From: Trichoplax adhaerens
Lineage: Eukaryota; Animalia; Placozoa
Reading direction: 5' to 3'
Assembly: GCF_000150275.1 (NCBI RefSeq)
Contig: NW_002060968.1
Span: 467,788 to 531,787, forward strand
Length of the DNA: 64,000 nucleotides
A program made the translations under genes and the position numbers. The notes under the pieces were generated by a model. The model made no database searches and was not told the DNA's origin. It saw only the letters and a program-made list of their open reading frames with translations. Positions 1 through 64,000 of this stretch are shown here, one piece after another. Within the stretch, counting starts at the first letter, position 1. The number at the start of each line of letters is the position of its first letter.

Positions 1-1583
1 ACTATTCGGCATCTACCGCTTAACTACAGCATCCAATATGACGAGCTGAGCTAATTGAACGCTGAGAAAGCTGAGCCCTGAGCTAACTAAACGCGGAGCT
101 GCTGCTATGCAGCAAAATATAATTACACCAAGGCTACCATTATGGCTCCTTCTATCGTAGTATCAACATTAATTACATATATTATACGCCAATTAATAAT
201 TCCATATTTATCAGTCGTATTTACGTACATTTTGATATACTACGCATATGATGGGATGAGAATAGTGCCTTAAATTACAGTAATTGTAGCGCTTGTGTAT
301 AAGAAGTATAGGAGCAGAATGGAGTGAAACATTATGTAACTAAGCAGCTTAAAATAGTCGATGGTAAGTGAAAACGTAATTGTGGATTGTGACTGATATA
401 ATAAAACGTCCAGCTTGTACTGTTCGAATTAATGACGATTATTGGAATTTCTAATAATAATGATTTAGTGTTATAAGATATTCTGACTGTATGTTACTCA
501 GTAATTCAATGGAAAAACTGCTATGACACATGTTCTAAGCTAATCCTTTTCATTAGTATTCAAGCATCATTAAAAAATATAGCATCTAGTATGAGCCCCG
601 TAATAAAGAATTACTACAAATTATGTATTACTATGATAGGGTTTTCTATTTAAACGATATTGCAATAACCGGTACTGTAGGTATTTCCATTTAATTATCA
701 CACTTTAATGCACTTACAAGTTAGTAACTCCAAACAACCGTGGACATCATACTGAGCTATGGCATTAGCTAGCTATTATACCTTTTCCTCTCTACAATCC
801 TTTTGGTATGCTAGCATTACATCGTGCACAAGTTCGTCCATTGAGATACATGAGCAACTGTTTACGAATCTTCTTCGCTTCTCGCTCGCTTTAGCCTTAA
901 ATTCATCTCCAACTAATATAACTGTTAGCATAGCATGTAACTATGACAGCGTTTATAAACTTTTCCTCTCTGCAGCTGCTGTACGGTAATTTTAATATTT
1001 ATTTTTCTGCTAACAAACTAACCCGTAGTGTAACGATAAATCCATGAATTATGTTATCTTATAGGGTTATACAATTACTATGGAAAGTTACAACATTGTG
1101 TCTGTTACGCTATATTGTAACGTATACTGCTGAAACTTAATAAAATTATGTATTAATGTAGTAACAGCTATATAAAATGACAAAACTACGCTTGCTTTGT
1201 CTTTTGTTTTGTATAGCAACATATGCTACTACTGGCTATTCTAAAATTGCACCATAGATGCCTGTTATTTTTATTAAAACTGCAAATTGATTACAATTTT
1301 GCCATTTAAGTATTTACTGCTTCAATGCATTCAGTTTTGAGATGAATTGCTTTCCAATGGCATATAATTTACAATAATATTCAAAATATTAAACATTCAA
1401 AATGAGATAGTAATCTAATGTAATGCTGAAGGAGAGATTATGGCAAGCCTTCAGATATATTTGCTTTTACAGGTGCCGTTGGAGTGGTACTGTATACCTC
1501 TTAACATTTGCCTTTAGAATATCCAATACGAAAAGCATATTTTGATGAAAAATTACTATCATCTCAGCAATATAAATCTTACC

Positions 1584-2024
1584 ACATTCCTTTTAAATAA
1601 TCGCAATTCATTCTTTAATCAAGAAATATTTTCAATTTTCAATCTTTAGAAGTTTCTCCTATCATATTCTTTATTGCATGCTTCAATGAAAAAAATTCAG
1701 AAAATCTATAAAATGTAGCAATTTCTTATGTATTTAAGAAAAAATTCTTACTGTATGATTTTATAAAGTTGCACATGTAATGATTTGAAGAGACTACACT
1801 GTAAATCATATATTAAACATTTCCTTTTGCATTCTTTAATCTTAAAGAATTTTTAATTTTGTAAACCTCAGTAATTCTCCTTATTACAGTATAATTCCTG
1901 TTATTCTTAAATTCTGAAAAATTCTTGAATTTTATAAAGTAAAGTAATTTCTTATGTTTTAATTTATCGAAGAGAAGATCATCACTGTATGATTTTATAA
2001 AATTTTATATATAATAATTGAAAG
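1584..2024. repeat. Degenerate direct duplication, two units, period about 235 bp
   Basis: Shared blocks such as CATTCTTTAATC, AATTTCTTATGT and ACTGTATGATTTTATAAA recur about 235 bp apart (about 1584-1790 and 1817-2024). Boundaries approximate. Confidence 0.6.
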
Positions 2025-57070: not shown

Positions 57071-60000
57071 ATGTCTCAAAATTTTACTGAAAGCATTGAT
57101 AACTCAACATCCATATTCGACGATCAAGCTGAGACCTTGAATGATACAAAATTTGGCACTGCGGATAATGCTGCTAGTTCTTTACAGTCTGAAGATGATA
57201 TTAAAGCTCAACAAAATTTTATTGAGCAGGATGAAGCTATTATAAAAGTAGAAAATACATCTATTGAATCCTCTACCGTTTTTGAGAGTAATTATAATGA
57301 AGTAAATTTTAACTCAGAAAGCAATCAATCTATGAAGAAGGAGATTAAAAAAGAGAACGAGGATGAATTGCAAGAAGATTTCAATAATTATTTTGATCAA
57401 TCGAACGAAAATCGCGACTTCATCGAGGATAATAATAAATTCTTGGATATGGAACAAAACTCAAAATCTGAACATTCCAAACTAACTGGCGCGGAACAAG
57501 TTTGCCAGCATGGCGTACATTTTAGTTGTCAGGATTGCAAATTACAGAAGCAAAGAGCGCTTACACGAAATAGAGTTCGATTACATCGAATGAGAAAACG
57601 ACAAAAACAATATTTACAAAGTTTAATGTAAGTAAATTTCAGTAAAGCCCTAATAGCATTTTCTTTGAACCAACAGAAGGCCAAGCTCTAGTGACAATCA
57701 TATCATGATGAAGAATAACCCCTGATAAATTAAAATAACTCTTAACATACTTTCTAGGGACGATAATGAGCAAATACCATATGCTTCTAGATGTGCAAAT
57801 GGAGCTATCAGTAGAAGTCGTGGATACGCTATATCGACAAATAATCGTAAGAGTGAGAATATAATATTTTACTGGAATCTTTGATATTATCCGACAGTCA
57901 TAACAGTTATTAAAAATTGAATGCTAATAATTTTGATACATTTAATATTAGGAGTTGAAGATCGTAAATATCAATTAGCTAATTCGTCCGTTGAAAAAGC
58001 AAATCAAGGCTACTATGTCGAACCCTCCAAAATTCCTAATAGTAATTTGCTACTCCACTCCTTACAGGTCTCAGGTCATAAAGAGCATTCTAACTGTAAT
58101 ACATCGATTTACTATCCATCATCTTCTAATAATGTATCGGCTGAGGCAATAATTTACTCAGAAAAGGAAGATCAGAATAATCCCTTTTGCTCCAAATGTT
58201 TAAGAAAATATGATAAAAGTAGGAATTTGGCTTCCTCATTCTGCCCACACACGCAGCCAATGCGTGGTAGGGCACGTAATTTTGGTCTTTTAAATTCTAC
58301 AAGGTTAGCTAGCGAGAGGATGTCGTTGTGGATGTGTTTAAAACATTTACTGAAATATTTTTTATTTTTTTGATCGTTGTTATCATCAACTATAAAAATT
58401 CACATTCAGTAAGAATTTATACGACAAATCTGTTGCACCAAACACAAATGAACACCACCATCTAAATAAAGACAGAGTAGATCACCAGGGCGATTATGGT
58501 AAGTGAGCAAGTTAGTCTACGTATTTCCTGTTGATGCTTTTGTAGTTTTAAAGCGCTATTAAAAGCTGGCCTATCGATTAACTAGGGAATTTTGATCTTA
58601 ATAATGTTATAGCTAAAACAGCTTATGGAGATGACCAAGAAATGGACAATTTTCACTGCATTGCAGATGCAGCTGGTGATAATTTTTTAAATGATACCGC
58701 CTCTTATGATTGTTCACATGGTGCGAATAAGATTACTGATGTTATAGATTATATAGATAAAATGACTACAGACAGTAAAACTTCTCTAGTCAAGAAAAAA
58801 CACTATTGCGGAATAGGTAAAGAATGTATTGTCTATGTCTGTAGTCGTGGAAAATGCCGAGGGAGTTTGCAAAATGCAAACATTGCAAATTACTGTCCAT
58901 ATGGTATAAAATTAATCAATAACTTTTCTTGCGGAAATACGTATCGAGTTAAAGTATTCGGACAGCATAATCATAAGGTACAGGAAAAAGATATTCTTTC
59001 CGCCAATCAAAAGCTACATGGGAAAGTTAAAAAATGGATAACGGCTTGCCTTCTTAGTGGAATGAGTATAAAGCGTATATTTAAAGCTAGCATAGATCAA
59101 GAAAACATTCTCAGTATTGGTCGTATTCCTATCTGTAACGTAGCACTAAAAGGACTTGATGCAGCATCAGCATGGCACCCGTCCATCAACCAAATTGCAA
59201 AGGTTAAAAAGATGGTCAAGAAATCTCGAAACAGCTATGTCAAGCTTAAATTGAATATTCCAAAAATGCTTGACAAATATCGTGATCAAGTTCTGTATAT
59301 CAGTACTTTTGAAGATACCGAATCCATTAACTTATATCTATCTATGGCTAATAAAGGCTTATCAATTTGCAATGCGGATTCATTTAGTCCAATTAAGGTG
59401 CCTAATAATTTGTTTCTTTGCGTATTGCAAACAGAATATATGCGGGCCCGCATGCTAAGCATACAAAATTTGCGTTCGGGCAAATCAGTCTTACACTATT
59501 CAGGCACCAAAAAATTAAATGCTTGTGGACTAGTATTAGGTGCCTTTCTCTATAGATGTCATGCAAAATTAGGTGAAATCGTGGCATATGTTATTTTATC
59601 CGATCATAGTGTAGAGTTGTTAGGTACTGCTTTATCGAAATTGATTTTGGTAGGACTAAAACCAGATATTGGAATAACCAATAAATGTAATAGTATGATA
59701 TGTGCCTTTGAGTGCCTTTTTGGTCCGTCGTTTCCAGTTTTTATAGATCGTAGCTCTATTTTGGATCAATGGAAGAGATGGTTAGCATCATCTAGGCATC
59801 ATCCTCCTAATTGCTTCCCTAGTCCAGCAGATCAATGTTTTATACTAGACAAGATTAGAATACTAGCTACTACTACGGAAGTGGAAAACTTTGCCATAGA
59901 AAAACGGATATTACTCCGATATTGCAAGAAAAAAGGCCTTGATCACGTAAATCATCATTATAGCAACAAATATGGCTTATCATTAGAACAAGCACTCAAA

Positions 60001-60243
60001 AGTTATAATGATCAAAATATTCAACGGAAAATCCCCCTCTATGATTGTTGCGAAAAATTTTGGTGCTTGGTTTATCAAAAAAGTGACTCGGAATTAATAT
60101 CATCAGAGAGCTTAAGCGCTATTGGCAGAAGACATTTTGAAGAATTATATCATCATATTGACATGAAGAAAGGCAGAAATGTTCAAAAGTTTATTTATCA
60201 AGTGTTTGATATTATGAAATTACAGTGCCATGCAGCCAAGTAA
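57071..60243 (+). CDS. Mutator/MULE transposase-derived protein 1 (acidic N-terminus, CxH..CxxC plus basic motif, WRKY/GCM-type C2H2 finger, MULE-like core lacking catalytic Asp residues); 5 exons, about 905 aa
   Basis: Exons 57071-57627, 57758-57846, 57952-58303, 58410-58498, 58613-60243 join in frame with GT-AG sites (2718 nt). The last exon has YVCSRG..CPYGIKL..VKVFGQHNH, LFLCVLQTEYM, GEIVAYVILS, LKPDIGIT, FECLF and WKRWL, the motif order of MULE transposases as recognised by eye. Confidence 0.8.
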
Positions 60244-61612
60244 ATTTATTGACAGTATTTATAAAGTACCATATTACATATGCACTTATTCGTCTTTGCT
60301 AAAGGATATCCATTTACGAATAAATGCGATTATACTTAATTTAATCTGTCTAAATGTCTACGTAATGGTAGCATTTGGGTTTTATATGAGAGACATAGTT
60401 TACCAAATTGGATTTGTTATCTTTAGAATGAGCGAAAAAAGCGAATTGATAGTTTACTTTAGCCAATATATTATATGAGTTTAACACTAGCATATTAATA
60501 ATTAATGACTCTGGGACAGTATTTTGGAATAAATGACAAATGTGAGAATTGAAGGTAAAAATAGTATTTCATTTTCTAGCTTTTCTAATGCAATCGTTGG
60601 TGTTAATGCTTTAAATAATAATACGATAAAGAAATAGAAATTGGAAATTGGAAGAGAAAAACGGTGCATACGATGATAAACTAAGATACTATAACTTATA
60701 CTACAGTATATTCCAAAATGTGTCGGTAGAGTTAAGTGAAATAATATTGACATAACAAGCCAAAGACATATTCCAGTATGAATAAGAATAGCATGTGCAC
60801 TAATAGTCTGCATATTAAAGTTCAACTAAGCTAGAGCTTCTAATGCCTGCGCATACCATTACTTCATTTACGTTAACTATTCGGAATGGTAAATTGATTA
60901 AAATTGCAAAGCGATAAGAGAAACTATAGGACTCGAAGCGATAGCACTTGAAATATCATAGTAACATTAGCAGAGATCGGAAAACCACAGTACCTGCAAG
61001 ATCGATTTCAAGTAACCCCTACTCCTTAATACGAATCTATTTAGAAATTATTCAAGATTTAGAATATTGATCAAAATATCGATGAATTGCTGCGAACTAA
61101 TCATGATACAGTATATTCCTCGATCGACTATTTTCTGTACTTACACTGATGCCAGATTCTACCCCGTTTTTCAATTTTAGTATGTATCCGAACAATGTAA
61201 AGGATGTGATAGACAGGATCATTGCGAATAACCAAGAGATCTTGAGGGAGAGTAGAATGGAATTAGAAAATTTAAATTATTGCAAGCGATCGATCCAATC
61301 TTCAAGTGATGTTGATTTCCATTTGCTTTGAATAACTTTCTTAGAATTGGTACTATTGAAAGATTGTTTCTTTGGGTTTAGCTAGAGCTGATGATCATGT
61401 CAAATTGAATTGATATTTAGGAAGAGATCGAAGTGAAAATCGCCATTTCCTTCAAAGACAACAACATAAATCAAGATCAGCATCTAAGTGTACGACCAAT
61501 CTTAAAAATTGGTGCGCTATTGCATGTTGTGCTTACCATTGATACTAAATTTCTTTTTTAAGTGAGATTAAAATGATCTAAATTTACCTTACGATTACGG
61601 TTGTAAAATTAG

Positions 61613-64000
61613 GATTTCTATGCCGATAAATGGCTTTAGGCCTAACCATAGACATTCATTTCAAAGAAGGTCTTATTCGGCGGATGCAGGTATACTTATG
61701 GTAGATTTAAAACTGATATACTTTCAATCCTATCAAAGTACAGAGATTTTAGAAAATTACGGTGCTTTATAGCATACACCATTATTAAATCCGTACATAC
61801 TATAACATTTGTAGATAGCAACAATTTTCTTCATTTTAGTTCCTCGGGACTGTCGCTGTACTTTTCAAGAACACTTTAGTTCAGATATTCAAGTTGGCAA
61901 ACAGTGTTCAAATCCCTGTAATACATCAGGAAGTAATGTTCTGATCAATAATAGGTCTGAGATTTCACTAAGAACACAGGTAAAGTATTGTTAAAGTGTA
62001 TCAACCTTATAATATTTGCTATGATTTACGGTGCGGTAGAGCAAAGGACTCGAATTAACCTAACTTATATCGCTGAAATCTTTTCAGGGTAAGCAAACTT
62101 TACATGGAGAAGAAACTAGCCACAGTATAAGACAAAGGTTTAACTCTTATTATATCATATTATGACTCCAATTAGATTTATACTTTCTAGAATAAATTTT
62201 GTTTCAATTAAATTTAATAGAAACTCTGAAAATATTTATAGAAAGCAATACAATGCAACCAATCCTAACAATATTTTCATCGATGATGGCAGGAAAAATA
62301 AAGCGCATAGTACACCAGATAATCTTATTTCTAAACCATTAGGCGATGAAATTTATCCGTGCCATGGTCGAAATCCCATGCACATAATTAATACATGATG
62401 AATTGTAATACGTTTATTTTTGCAATGTTTACTAGAAAATGTGAAGAAATTCATTTACAAGACTGCGAATAGAAATCTAAGCCATGACACGAGCTCCGTT
62501 TCAAATTCTTCTATCCAGACAGTCAATATGAACAGCTTAGAGGATCTTGATGATTTCCCTTCAAAATGGCAAGCTTGCCAAAAACAAACCGGAGAAATTC
62601 CAGTGTCTGAACTCAGTTCCTTTTTAATAAATTTAACTGCAGATAACAGCTTTACTTTAACCAAAAAAAGTCATGTCATGAATGGCAGCAGTGAAGAACT
62701 CTGTTTCTTCTGCCGCAGAAATGATTTCTTGGAGGGTCATGCTAATACAAAAAGCAATGTCAAGCCGTGTCCATTTTATGTCAAAATATCCAATTTCTAC
62801 TGCAAAAGAGAGGTTTACCAAATTGAAATGCAAGGATATCATAATCATGCTACGAAAAACAGTAAAGCTAATAATCAAGTCCGTCGAATTCTTCATCGCT
62901 CTGTAAGAGCATGGATCATTGCATGTCTTCGCTCAGGTATGAGTTCAAGACTTACATTTATGGCCAGCATTAATCGTCTAAATATTCCAGGAATAGGCTC
63001 GATCCCAACCAGTAGCAACAATGCGCGTTTATCATCGTCATCCAATTCGATCATCTGGAATCCAACGCTGAAGCAGATCATTAGTATTAAGAACAAATTA
63101 AGAAATGCTCATCAATGTCACATCAGCGATAACCATTGTGTACGAAAACTGATTTTAAAATACCGCAATGATGTAGTTTACATGAGCACTTTTGAAGACA
63201 CGGACGCTGTTAATCAATTTCTTGAAATAAGAAAAAAACATTTACATAAATCGAATTGCTCTATTGGTCTAACTCATGTACCCAAAGATTTATTTCTTTG
63301 CGTATTGCAAACGGATTTTATGCGTAAGCGTATGATAAAGATCCAAAAGATAAAGCAAGGAGATGCAATTTTGCATTATCATACCATAGATGGACTTGAC
63401 TGGCATGGTCAACCTATCGGATTATTATTATACAAAAACGAATTTGATGTCGCAGAAATTATCGCATACATAATATCATCAGAACCAATCGTTGAGCTGT
63501 TAAGTATTTCACTTTCTAAACTGGTTGAAGTTGGATTATCTCCTGATGCGGGGATAGTAACTGAATGGAACTATGTTGCTAGCTCTTATAAGTGTATTTT
63601 CGATGATTCATTCTCGATATTTATTAGTAGTTATCATTTAGTAGAAGGATGGAAGAGATGGTTAGTATCTGTAAAGAATCATCCCATTAATTTGACGCCT
63701 ACTGAAGCAGATCGCATTACAATATTAAACAAAGTTAAGACATTAGCAACAACTGACCAGGAAAATATTCATGCAGAAACGAAGCTAGGCTTATTTAATT
63801 ACTGTCGAGATAGAGGACTCCATCATATTATTGAGTATTATAACGAAAAATACGCAAATAATACCGCAAATAGGAAAATAAATGGCGGTATAGAATGGCA
63901 AACAACTGGGCAAGTGAGCGAAGATTGCTGGTGTTTACTATTCAAAGAGAAGGTTGCTAAATGGCTTCAGAATGGCAATCTGCATACTAGTATGGCATAT
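61613..64000 (+). CDS. MULE transposase-derived protein 2 (tandem paralog); 5' exons unresolved, 3' end beyond the window
   Basis: Frame-consistent exons 61613-61689, 61840-61979, 62088-62137, 62221-62366, then an uninterrupted ORF from 62436 to the window end (absent from the ORF track because it has no stop). It aligns with protein 1: FFCRRN..CPFYVKI..GYHNH, WIIACLRSGMS, YMSTFEDT, LFLCVLQTDFMRKRM, LSKLVEVGLSPD, WKRWL..NHP. Further upstream exons probably lie at about 60970-61490. Confidence 0.8.

What the first reader, a model, noticed from the sequence alone, without database searches (positions are those of the whole stretch)
57071..64000. Tandem pair of apparently domesticated, catalytically dead Mutator transposases: a candidate lineage-specific transcription-factor family
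Seen: two intact, intron-containing paralogs with long unrelated N-termini spliced through a phase-1 intron onto one large exon, and no TIRs or TSDs noticed. The zinc-finger ligands (C..C..HNH) are conserved in both. Where MULE transposases have the first Asp (xDxT), second Asp (xTD) and CxxH, protein 1 reads HYSGT / GITNK / DRSS and protein 2 reads HYHTI / GIVTE / SSYH, so each has different substitutions while the surrounding scaffold is kept. Established: MULE domestication produced plant FAR1/FHY3 and MUSTANG and fungal Aft1/Rcs1 regulators. Inference: an independent animal domestication followed by gene duplication, retaining DNA binding and losing catalysis. I know of no description of this family but cannot search. 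This is the strongest novelty candidate in the window.
Basis: partly seen in the sequence, partly recalled or inferred. Interest (0 to 1): 0.85.

Follow-up and report, generated by a model that had tools for sequence, protein, structure and literature searches.

The report
Dead Mutator-transposase gene pair in Trichoplax
Two neighbouring Trichoplax genes most likely descend from a Mutator-type jumping-gene enzyme that kept its DNA-binding zinc finger and lost its cutting residues; taming of this kind is known, but it has not been reported for placozoans.

Summary
The window is Trichoplax adhaerens. The two paralogues are real. Gene 1 is TRIADDRAFT_61723 (57071-60243). Gene 2's large exon runs from 62436 to about 147 nt past the window end. 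They are 36% identical (E 1e-91) and are the only copies in the genome. No terminal inverted repeats flank them. Trichoplax sp. H2 has adjacent orthologues, and two unnamed Logan assemblies hold one deeper orthologue of each, so the duplication is old.

No profile method links the family to MULE: Pfam, hhalign and a PDB profile search all gave nothing. The link rests on three things:
- Protein-language-model features of both paralogues put MULE/ZSWIM1-3/FAR1 clusters first (0.97 and 0.95).
- All ten nearest structure clusters to the Atlas model of gene 2 belong to those families.
- The N-terminal C..C..HxH domain matches AFT2 and WRKY folds (Z 5-6).

Across the family, residues 196-533 hold only four conserved acidic columns and no conserved DDE triad.

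The best reading is a placozoan-restricted, domesticated, catalytically dead MULE derivative that binds DNA. Unproven points are a transcription-factor role, expression, the exact DDE mapping and gene 2's upstream exons. It is a new member of a known kind. The scan has noted dead transposase genes of other superfamilies elsewhere in this genome, but not this family.

The parts
57071..57627 (+). Gene 1 (TRIADDRAFT_61723) exon 1. It is acidic and Asn-rich, then has a Cys/His cluster and a basic stretch.
   Evidence: ORF. It matches P0001 residues 1-186 and is identical in the H2 model P0008. The donor GTAAGT at 57628 was read. No Pfam hit.
57758..57846 (+). Gene 1 exon 2
   Evidence: Peptide match to P0001 from residue 187. 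The AG acceptor at 57756-57 and the GT donor at 57847-48 were read.
57952..58303 (+). Gene 1 exon 3, which contains a CxxC...CxH cluster
   Evidence: Peptide match to P0001 from residue 217. Only a weak Ima1_N hit, E 0.0096, below the cut-off.
58410..58498 (+). Gene 1 exon 4, followed by the phase-1 intron 58499-58585
   Evidence: Peptide match to P0001 from residue 333. The GT at 58499 and the AG at 58584-85 were read.
58586..60243 (+). Gene 1 large exon, holding the whole transposase-like protein body
   Evidence: 100% match to P0001 residues 382-914.
58714..58986 (+). Gene 1 WRKY-GCM1/FAR1-like zinc finger (ORF residues 25-115; ligands C67, C85, H109, H111)
   Evidence: Four predicted strands at 47-106. 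VIA-align: AFT2 4lmg Z 6.3, rmsd 3.2, 68 aligned; WRKY domains Z 5.1-6.0. These are the only matches to this domain listed in the search of all PDB representatives. The ligands are invariant.
59401..59781 (+). Gene 1 inferred RNase H-like core (ORF residues 254-380). Ser287 sits where the first Asp is expected, Asn345 where the second is expected, and D369-R-S-S372 where (C/D)xxH is expected.
   Evidence: Motifs. Atlas features point to MULE/ZSWIM1-3. No conserved Asp in this stretch. The register is inferred, not shown by a profile alignment.
59782..60081 (+). Gene 1 helical insertion (confidently modelled at residues 372-445) and the helix with Glu471, the candidate third triad residue
   Evidence: pLDDT 63-91 for cropped residues 181-250. 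The Glu column is kept in four of five sequences and shifted by one in P0004.
62436..64000 (+). Gene 2 large exon (H2 orthologue TrispH2_011250). It continues about 147 nt past the window end to a stop at L002:3057.
62585..62863 (+). Gene 2 zinc finger (ORF residues 56-148 counted from L002:1330)
   Evidence: Aligned with the gene 1 finger and has the same invariant ligands.
63281..63664 (+). Gene 2 inferred RNase H-like core, with HYHTI, GIVTE and SSYH at the expected motif places
   Evidence: Atlas features 0.95 and structural neighbours all MULE-type.
61181..62366 (+). Small exons between the two genes with uncertain ownership. The JGI model gives 61632-62366 to gene 2's 5' end. The H2 model joins 61181 onward to gene 1's 3' end.
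   Evidence: P0005. P0008 tail. Sequence read.

Best explanation
The two genes are a tandem pair of host genes, restricted to placozoans as far as sequence searches can see. They descend from one Mutator-like (MULE) transposase.

Each protein keeps:
- the N-terminal four-stranded WRKY-GCM1/FAR1-type zinc finger with which MULE transposases bind DNA;
- a short helical linker;
- the RNase H-like core with its helical insertion.

Each lacks the two catalytic aspartates and a complete (C/D)xxH motif. Neither has a SWIM finger or transposon ends. They therefore cannot cut or move DNA.

The most likely function is sequence-specific DNA binding in the nucleus, with the dead core serving as an interaction or dimerisation scaffold, as in plant FHY3/FAR1. 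Gene 1 adds a long acidic, low-complexity N-terminal extension that could act as an effector region.

Shown: paralogy, copy number, lack of TIRs, orthologues, zinc-finger fold, lack of a conserved acidic triad.
Inferred: MULE ancestry of the core, the residue mapping, DNA binding and any regulatory role.
For: Ancestry:
- Atlas feature search with the gene 1 exon gave a best cluster of PF21056/PF10551 at 0.97 with 194 of 256 shared features. Nine of the ten best named hits were one clan.
- The 36%-identical gene 2 protein P0005 gave the same clusters at 0.95 with 182 shared features. All ten listed structural neighbours of its Atlas model were MULE, ZSWIM1-3, FAR1 or SWIM clusters, with 282-424 aligned residues and TM by row up to 0.61.
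- The AlphaFold model of residues 25-115 aligns to AFT2 (Z 6.3) and WRKY domains (Z 5-6). C67, C85, H109 and H111 are invariant.
- There is a weak local similarity to Trichoplax's own PF21056 proteins. P0002 against P0007 gave z 5.0, with 2 of 5000 shuffles reaching the score.

Loss of catalysis:
- In residues 196-533 the only conserved acidic columns are D225, E312, E325 and D/E375.
- The D-D spacing of 58 and the D-E spacing of 126 resemble Muta1's 69 and 136. The half-kept (C/D)xxH lies 24 residues after the second position, inside the published 15-45 range (PMC5499845).

Host-gene status:
- Only two copies in 105.6 Mb, and only four 50% clusters among 1.84 billion representatives.
- No TIRs.
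- Adjacent H2 orthologues TrispH2_011249 and TrispH2_011250.
- The tree split (gene 1 with P0002 | gene 2 with P0004) has 100/100 support.
- Between the paralogues pN is 0.435 while pS is saturated at 0.775.
- Gene 1 against the DNA run X1 shows 5 synonymous and 3 non-synonymous changes.
- Gene 1 is 907/913 identical to its H2 orthologue.
Against: - No profile or HMM method sees the relationship. Pfam gave nothing for any member even at E 10.
- hhalign against Trichoplax MULE pieces gave probabilities under 1%. hhalign against a 57-sequence IS256 profile gave 0.1%.
- The PDB profile search found nothing, although an IS256-type Mutator-family structure (6xg8) is in the library.
- Both AlphaFold runs gave pLDDT 43-44 and modelled the core as low-confidence helices.
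- The two Atlas results come from one language model and are not independent of each other. Its model of P0005 has pLDDT 0.53, and most TM scores are below 0.5.
- Pairwise alignments disagree on the register at the first Asp.
- Gene 2 differs from its H2 orthologue at 17 of 539 residues, and 4 non-synonymous against 0 synonymous changes were seen in its first 600 nt. Relaxed constraint on gene 2 is therefore possible.
- Expression was not shown.
Confidence: 0.7

Rival explanations
1. The proteins are MULE-derived and dead, but they are not gene-specific transcription factors. They might act in genome defence by occupying the ends of related transposons, or as chromatin or adaptor proteins. Gene 2 would be the fast-evolving partner.
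For: Gene 2 changes about five times faster than gene 1 at the protein level between H1 and H2: 17/539 against 6/913, Fisher p 0.0004. The genome still holds MULE fragments. There is no SWIM region, which is the activation part in FHY3/FAR1 (PMC13306707).
Against: Only four PF10551 matches turned up in the genome, one of them bacterial, so there are few targets to repress.
Confidence: 0.15
2. The family is not transposase-derived. It would be a placozoan orphan family that carries a WRKY-like zinc finger, and the language-model resemblance to MULE would be driven by that finger or by chance.
For: Every alignment-based test was blank. AlphaFold did not give an RNase H fold. Z scores of 5-6 are middling.
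Against: Two paralogues only 36% identical both rank MULE clusters first among 7.7 million. The structural alignments span 282-424 residues, far more than the roughly 90-residue finger. The tool states that shuffled proteins reach 0.95 about once in 100. Motif order and spacing fit the published MULE layout (PMC5499845).
Confidence: 0.1
3. The two genes are stranded copies of a non-TIR MULE that decay neutrally and do nothing for the host.
For: Gene 2 shows many amino-acid differences from its H2 orthologue, and 4 non-synonymous against 0 synonymous changes in its first 600 nt. Some MULE groups lack TIRs (PMC6446971).
Against: Open frames of 553 and 581 codons have chance probability near 1e-20. 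Both paralogues are kept intact in a second, deeply diverged lineage. pN is well below the saturated pS. The core of gene 1 is identical between H1 and H2. An upstream phase-1 intron is shared at a similar place.
Confidence: 0.03
4. The proteins are still nucleases or recombinases that use a non-canonical active site.
For: A Glu at the third triad place is kept in most members. D225, E312, E325 and D/E375 are conserved.
Against: The conserved acids do not lie at the ends of beta1 and beta4 in the inferred topology. The residues at the two Asp places differ between lineages (S/Y/H/N and N/N/T/A), which does not look like a new fixed active site. In Muta1 each triad residue is needed for cleavage and joining (PMC5499845).
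Confidence: 0.02

Closest known systems
Plant FHY3/FAR1/FRS proteins (MULE-derived transcription factors)
   Same: Same order of parts: an N-terminal zinc finger ending in H-N-H, then the MULE-derived core. No catalysis, no transposon ends, low copy number and paralogous partners. The architecture resembles the truncated 'FM-type' members that lack SWIM (PMC13306707).
   Different: No Pfam FAR1 (PF03101), MULE or SWIM hit. Found only in placozoans. DNA binding, dimerisation and activation are untested. Common descent of the domestication event is neither expected nor shown.
Fungal Aft1/Aft2/Rcs1 iron regulators (WRKY-GCM1 DNA-binding domain of MULE origin)
   Same: AFT2 bound to DNA (4lmg) is the best structural match of the zinc-finger domain: Z 6.2-6.3, rmsd 3.2-3.3, 68 residues.
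   Different: The match has only 15% identity and a middling Z. The placozoan proteins keep the whole transposase body. I did not compare the parts of Aft1/Aft2 outside the DNA-binding domain.
ZSWIM1/ZSWIM3-type animal proteins (Pfam PF21056, ZSWIM1-3_RNaseH-like)
   Same: The top Atlas cluster for both paralogues carries PF21056 and PF10551. These are animal proteins with a MULE-like RNase H core.
   Different: PF21056 does not hit these proteins, and there is no SWIM finger. Trichoplax has a separate true PF21056 gene, TRIADDRAFT_59636, that still reads DGT and TDD.
Animal 'FHY3-like' MULE-derived factors catalogued by Mukherjee and Moroz 2023 (PMC10027918)
   Same: The same idea: lineage-specific co-option of MULE transposases as regulators in sponges, molluscs, brachiopods and others.
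   Different: That survey reports no FHY3-type gene in Trichoplax. This pair is too diverged for the BLAST and domain searches used there.
Active MULE transposases such as Muta1 (Aedes aegypti) and the IS256-family ISCth4 (PDB 6xg8)
   Same: An N-terminal WRKY/FLYWCH-class finger plus a DDE core with a helical insertion. Similar spacing of the triad places (PMC5499845).
   Different: Muta1 needs D214, D283, E419 and W401. Here both Asp places are substituted. No W lies upstream of the Glu, there are no TIRs or TSDs, and there are only two copies.

Membership tests
MULE / Mutator transposase superfamily (PF10551, PF21056, PF00872) | Profile match to the MULE core above the curated cut-off | tested here: not met
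   No Pfam family at E up to 1 for the two exons, and none of the MULE group at E up to 10 for any of five members. A PF10551 scan of the genome found other loci but not this one.
MULE / Mutator transposase superfamily (PF10551, PF21056, PF00872) | RNase H-like core with helical insertion, structurally like known MULEs | tested here: inconclusive
   All ten nearest clusters to the Atlas model of P0005 are MULE-type, with TM by row 0.28-0.61 and 282-424 aligned residues. The model's pLDDT is 0.53. Both AlphaFold runs failed on the core, so no comparison with 6xg8 was possible.
MULE / Mutator transposase superfamily (PF10551, PF21056, PF00872) | N-terminal WRKY-GCM1-class zinc finger (FLYWCH, FAR1 or MuDR type; PMC1702500) | tested here: met
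   Invariant C..C..H-N-H. Best matches for residues 25-115 are AFT2 and WRKY domains, Z 5.1-6.3. The Z values are middling, so this shows fold class only.
MULE / Mutator transposase superfamily (PF10551, PF21056, PF00872) | Conserved DDE triad | tested here: not met
   No column with Asp in all members between residues 226 and 533. The conserved acids are only D225, E312, E325 and D/E375.
MULE / Mutator transposase superfamily (PF10551, PF21056, PF00872) | (C/D)xxH motif 15-45 residues after the second Asp, and a W before the Glu (PMC5499845) | tested here: not met
   At 24 residues after the inferred second place, gene 1 reads DRSS, P0002 reads QHWS, gene 2 reads SSYH and P0004 reads STTH. 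Each keeps at most half of the motif. There is no invariant W between residues 381 and 473.
MULE / Mutator transposase superfamily (PF10551, PF21056, PF00872) | Terminal inverted repeats, target-site duplication and several copies | tested here: not met
   No repeat longer than 30 nt flanks either gene. Two copies only.
Domesticated transposase-derived host gene | Low copy number, fixed position, orthologues in related species | tested here: met
   Two copies. Adjacent H2 genes 011249 and 011250 on one contig. Deeper orthologues of each paralogue exist.
Domesticated transposase-derived host gene | Purifying selection on the coding sequence | tested here: met
   pN 0.435 against a saturated pS of 0.775 between the paralogues. 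Gene 1 shows 5 synonymous and 3 non-synonymous changes against run X1 and is 99.3% identical to H2. For gene 2, recent constraint is unclear, with 17 of 539 residues changed.
Domesticated transposase-derived host gene | Transcribed and spliced | tested here: inconclusive
   The four runs laid gave contigs that cover introns and intergenic DNA and show no splice joints, so they behave as DNA. The only indirect hint is that H2 gene models come from an evidence-based pipeline (PMC6057997).
FHY3/FAR1-type transcription factor | FAR1 DNA-binding domain (PF03101) and C-terminal SWIM finger (PF04434) | tested here: not met
   Neither Pfam family was hit. There is no conserved Cys/His pattern after residue 476.
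FHY3/FAR1-type transcription factor | Sequence-specific DNA binding, dimerisation through the core, transcriptional activity | not testable with these tools
   The complex prediction for the two cores returned no verdict. This is not evidence either way.

The most novel reading that the evidence does not exclude
The pair would be a DNA-binding regulator family found only in placozoans. It would have arisen by its own MULE domestication before the living placozoan lineages split, and then duplicated into a slow partner (gene 1) and a fast-evolving partner (gene 2). The family is invisible to Pfam and BLAST-type surveys. If true, catalogues of transposon-derived regulators in early-branching animals undercount them, and Trichoplax, listed as having no FHY3-type factor, has at least one such family.
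Probability: 0.35. Interest if true: 0.6.

Novelty: new member of a known kind. Interest (0 to 1): 0.5.

Why it matters
Taming of Mutator-like transposases into regulators is well established in plants (FHY3/FAR1, MUSTANG) and fungi (Aft1/Rcs1), and has been proposed for several animal phyla. The one survey that looked found none in Trichoplax (PMC10027918).

This locus shows a family that has diverged beyond the reach of profile searches yet is conserved within Placozoa. It adds a candidate lineage-specific DNA-binding family to an animal with a small regulator set. It also shows that surveys based on sequence similarity miss such genes.

Together with earlier notes of this scan on dead Sola1, hAT, piggyBac and ISL2EU genes in the same genome, it suggests that retained dead transposases are a recurrent feature of this genome. 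I did not check those notes myself. The finding does not change any principle.

Tried and rejected
Searches that found nothing:
- Pfam scan of the exons and of all five family members.
- Profile search with alignment A1 in the 5.8-billion-protein collection. It returned only family members.
- Profile search of PDB sequences. Only chance-level rows.
- A1 profile against the own genome at E 10. Only the two genes themselves.
- hhalign of A1 against Trichoplax MULE pieces L007 and L003.
- hhalign of A1 against a 57-sequence IS256 alignment built from 80 bacterial loci. Probability was under 1% in every case.
- A search with the Trichoplax PF21056 protein to collect MULE sequences. It gave only itself and its H2 orthologue, so I could not build a eukaryotic MULE profile.

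Structure attempts:
- AlphaFold2 on the whole exon (pLDDT 44) and on residues 196-533 (pLDDT 43). The core was not modelled.
- Foldseek against the PDB gave no match at E 0.001 or better.

Pairwise alignment:
- Smith-Waterman with shuffles was mostly not significant. The one significant pair puts the first Asp in a different register, so I do not use it to map residues.

Other:
- Complex prediction of the two cores gave no verdict (score 0.00). This is not evidence for or against binding.
- Reads: the first call found the machine busy. The second showed DNA-like contigs only.
- Literature look-ups by gene identifiers found nothing. Yuan and Wessler 2011 is not held.
- I considered D225 as the first catalytic Asp and rejected it, because a helix rather than the beta2-beta3 hairpin follows it.

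Full report
**What is there**

The window is Trichoplax adhaerens, G000 contig C1389:467788-531787. The + strand carries two long open frames: 58582-60240 (553 codons), and 62402 to past the window end (581 codons, completed in L002 with a stop about 147 nt beyond the window). They are 36% identical over 425 residues, E 1e-91. Given the local stop frequency of 0.077 per codon, frames this long have chance probability near 1e-20.

Gene 1 is the database record TRIADDRAFT_61723 (P0001, 914 aa). Its exons, read from the sequence and matched to P0001, are 57071-57627, 57758-57846, 57952-58303, 58410-58498 and 58586-60243. All introns are GT..AG, and the last one is phase 1.

I did not build or search a joined spliced model. 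Exons were searched by reference, and the full-length proteins used (P0001, P0005, P0008) are database records.

**Family size and distribution**

- The own genome (105.6 Mb) holds only these two copies, by single protein and by profile.
- A full phmmer pass over 1.84 billion representatives found four clusters only: gene 1; gene 2, represented by its Trichoplax sp. H2 orthologue P0003; and two proteins from unnamed Logan assemblies, P0002 and P0004.
- H2 has both genes with adjacent locus tags on one contig, TrispH2_011249 (P0008) and TrispH2_011250 (P0003).
- A maximum-likelihood tree separates (gene 1 H1, gene 1 H2, P0002) from (gene 2 H1, gene 2 H2, P0004) with 100/100 support. The duplication therefore predates the split from the Logan organism.
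- No inverted repeat longer than 30 nt flanks either gene.

**Constraint**

- Between the paralogues, synonymous sites are saturated (pS 0.775) while pN is 0.435.
- Run X1 covers introns and intergenic DNA evenly, so it is DNA, and it shares three of gene 2's H2-specific changes.
- Against X1, gene 1 has 5 synonymous and 3 conservative non-synonymous differences. SNP density is lower in coding than in non-coding DNA: 12 in 3315 nt against 21 in 2685 nt, p 0.035.
- Gene 1 is 907/913 identical to its H2 orthologue and has no change in the core.
- Gene 2 differs at 17 of 539 residues, significantly more than gene 1 (p 0.0004). In its first 600 nt it shows 4 non-synonymous and no synonymous changes.
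- The published genome-wide H1-H2 mean dS is 0.024, with mean dN/dS 0.37 (PMC6057997).
- Gene 1 is clearly constrained. For gene 2, long-term constraint is shown by the intact orthologue P0004, but its recent evolution is fast.

**Is it a Mutator transposase relative?**

Alignment-based methods say nothing:
- No Pfam hit for any member, even at E 10.
- No PDB sequence hit.
- hhalign probabilities under 1% against Trichoplax's own MULE pieces and against an IS256 profile.

Three other lines point the other way:
1. The Atlas feature search ranks MULE / ZSWIM1-3_RNaseH-like clusters first for the gene 1 exon (0.97, 194 of 256 shared features) and for the gene 2 protein P0005 (0.95, 182 shared). 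FLYWCH-, FAR1- and SWIM-bearing MULE clusters follow. The tool states that shuffled proteins reach 0.95 about once in 100.
2. The Atlas holds its own model of P0005. All ten listed structural neighbours are MULE, ZSWIM1-3, FAR1 or SWIM clusters, with 282-424 aligned residues spanning the whole large exon and TM by row up to 0.61. Lines 1 and 2 share one language model and are not independent of each other.
3. AlphaFold2 is independent of that model. It gave a usable model only for the N-terminal domain (four strands, residues 47-106) and for helices at 372-445. Residues 25-115 align best to AFT2 bound to DNA (4lmg: Z 6.3, rmsd 3.2, 68 residues) and to seven WRKY-domain entries (Z 5.1-6.0). In the search of all 48,161 PDB representatives, the only rows on that domain with Z of 5 or more are AFT2 and two WRKY domains. 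One lower row, AnaPT (4ld7, Z 4.8, rmsd 6.8), also overlaps the domain.

The WRKY-GCM1 fold is the DNA-binding domain of MULE transposases and of their domesticated offspring (PMC1702500). The ligands C67, C85, H109 and H111 are invariant.

I put MULE ancestry at about 0.85.

**Catalytic residues**

Whatever the exact register, the family alignment has no column with Asp in all members between residues 226 and 533. The only conserved acids after residue 195 are D225, E312, E325 and D/E375.

The pattern of hydrophobic strands and helices from 283 to 372 fits beta1-beta2-beta3-alpha1-beta4-alpha2-beta5. Under that inferred register:
- The first Asp place reads S / Y / H / N in gene 1 / P0002 / gene 2 / P0004.
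- The second reads N / N / T / A.
- The (C/D)xxH place, 24 residues later, reads DRSS / QHWS / SSYH / STTH.
- A Glu at 471 is kept in four of five sequences and shifted by one in P0004.

The spacings are 58 and 126, against 69 and 136 in Muta1. There D214, D283, E419 and W401 are each needed for cleavage and joining, and the (C/D)xxH motif lies 15-45 residues after the second Asp (PMC5499845).

No profile alignment or confident structure supports it, and one pairwise alignment puts the strand in another register. No SWIM finger is present.

**How it most likely works**

By analogy with FHY3/FAR1, the zinc finger would bind a specific DNA motif and the dead core would serve as an interaction or dimerisation surface (PMC13306707). 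The acidic, low-complexity N-terminus of gene 1 could be an effector region. None of this was tested. The complex prediction for the two cores gave no verdict.

The rivals are:
- a non-transcriptional role, such as defence or chromatin binding;
- no transposase ancestry at all;
- neutral relics;
- a non-canonical nuclease.

**Gene structure caveat**

- The JGI model of gene 2 (P0005, 710 aa) joins exons at 61632-62366 to the large exon through a phase-1 intron at 62367-62435.
- The H2 models differ. Gene 2 (P0003) starts at a Met inside the large exon.
- Gene 1 (P0008, 1134 aa) splices from a donor at 60240, which overlaps its own stop codon, to 61181 and on through the same small exons.
- Both large exons are entered by a phase-1 intron about 150 nt before the conserved region. 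This suggests that the intron predates the duplication.
- RNA data are needed. The runs I could lay were DNA-like.

**Comparison and novelty**

The kind is known: MULE-derived regulators in plants and fungi, animal proteins of the ZSWIM1/3 type, and 'FHY3-like' genes in several animal phyla. The survey that reported those found none in Trichoplax (PMC10027918). No paper in the library mentions these genes.

This is a new, highly diverged member of a known kind that is restricted to placozoans. Earlier notes of this scan describe dead transposase genes of other superfamilies (Sola1, ISL2EU, hAT, piggyBac) elsewhere in this genome. They do not describe this family, and I did not check them.

Noticed in passing
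window 60238-60245 and 61175-61185: The stop codon of gene 1 (TAA, 60241-60243) overlaps a good 5' splice site (GTAAAT from 60240). The H2 model P0008 uses that site to join exons starting at 61181, and it continues through the exons that the JGI model gives to gene 2. Gene 1 may therefore have a long and a short C-terminal form, or the two genes may share a transcript.
   Followed up: partly
window 62436-64000 versus P0003: Gene 2 differs from its H2 orthologue at 17 of 539 residues. Gene 1 differs at 6 of 913, with none in its core. In the first 600 nt of gene 2's exon, run X1 shows 4 non-synonymous and no synonymous changes. This could be relaxed constraint or positive selection on gene 2.
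   Followed up: partly
L007 (G000:C1404:2309542-2312754), ORF 1471-2367: A separate Trichoplax gene, TRIADDRAFT_59636 (P0006), hits Pfam ZSWIM1-3_RNaseH-like (30.3 bits). It still reads DGT and TDD at the Asp places. Its H2 orthologue is 82% identical (P0007). This is a second MULE-derived, low-copy gene in the genome.
   Followed up: partly
L006 (G000:C1329:9132-12371): An intact IS256-family transposase (393 aa) sits next to an IS3-like ORF. It matches PDB 6xg8 at E 4e-102 and is 72-74% identical to copies in Rickettsia endosymbionts and other Alphaproteobacteria. This is probably a piece of the bacterial endosymbiont left in the assembly.
   Followed up: partly
L003 (G000:C1033:4420-6378), ORF 1489-1908 minus strand: A 139-codon fragment with a clear MULE core (PF10551, 55.9 bits, reading LDGT and ISD with the following FP..H..C) lies on a small contig. 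It looks like a remnant of a true MULE element in Trichoplax.
   Followed up: no
window 57500-57627 (gene 1 exon 1, residues about 144-186): A Cys/His cluster is followed by a basic stretch with an Asn-x7-Arg spacing that recalls bZIP basic regions. No Pfam family matches it. It is identical in H2.
   Followed up: no
window 58999-59140 (gene 1 ORF residues 120-165): Between the finger and the core lies a conserved helical stretch (invariant W132, C136, L137, G140, A149, S150) modelled at pLDDT 61-69. It has a weak match to the TrpR helix-turn-helix (6ejw, Z 4.9). It may be a second DNA-contacting module.
   Followed up: no
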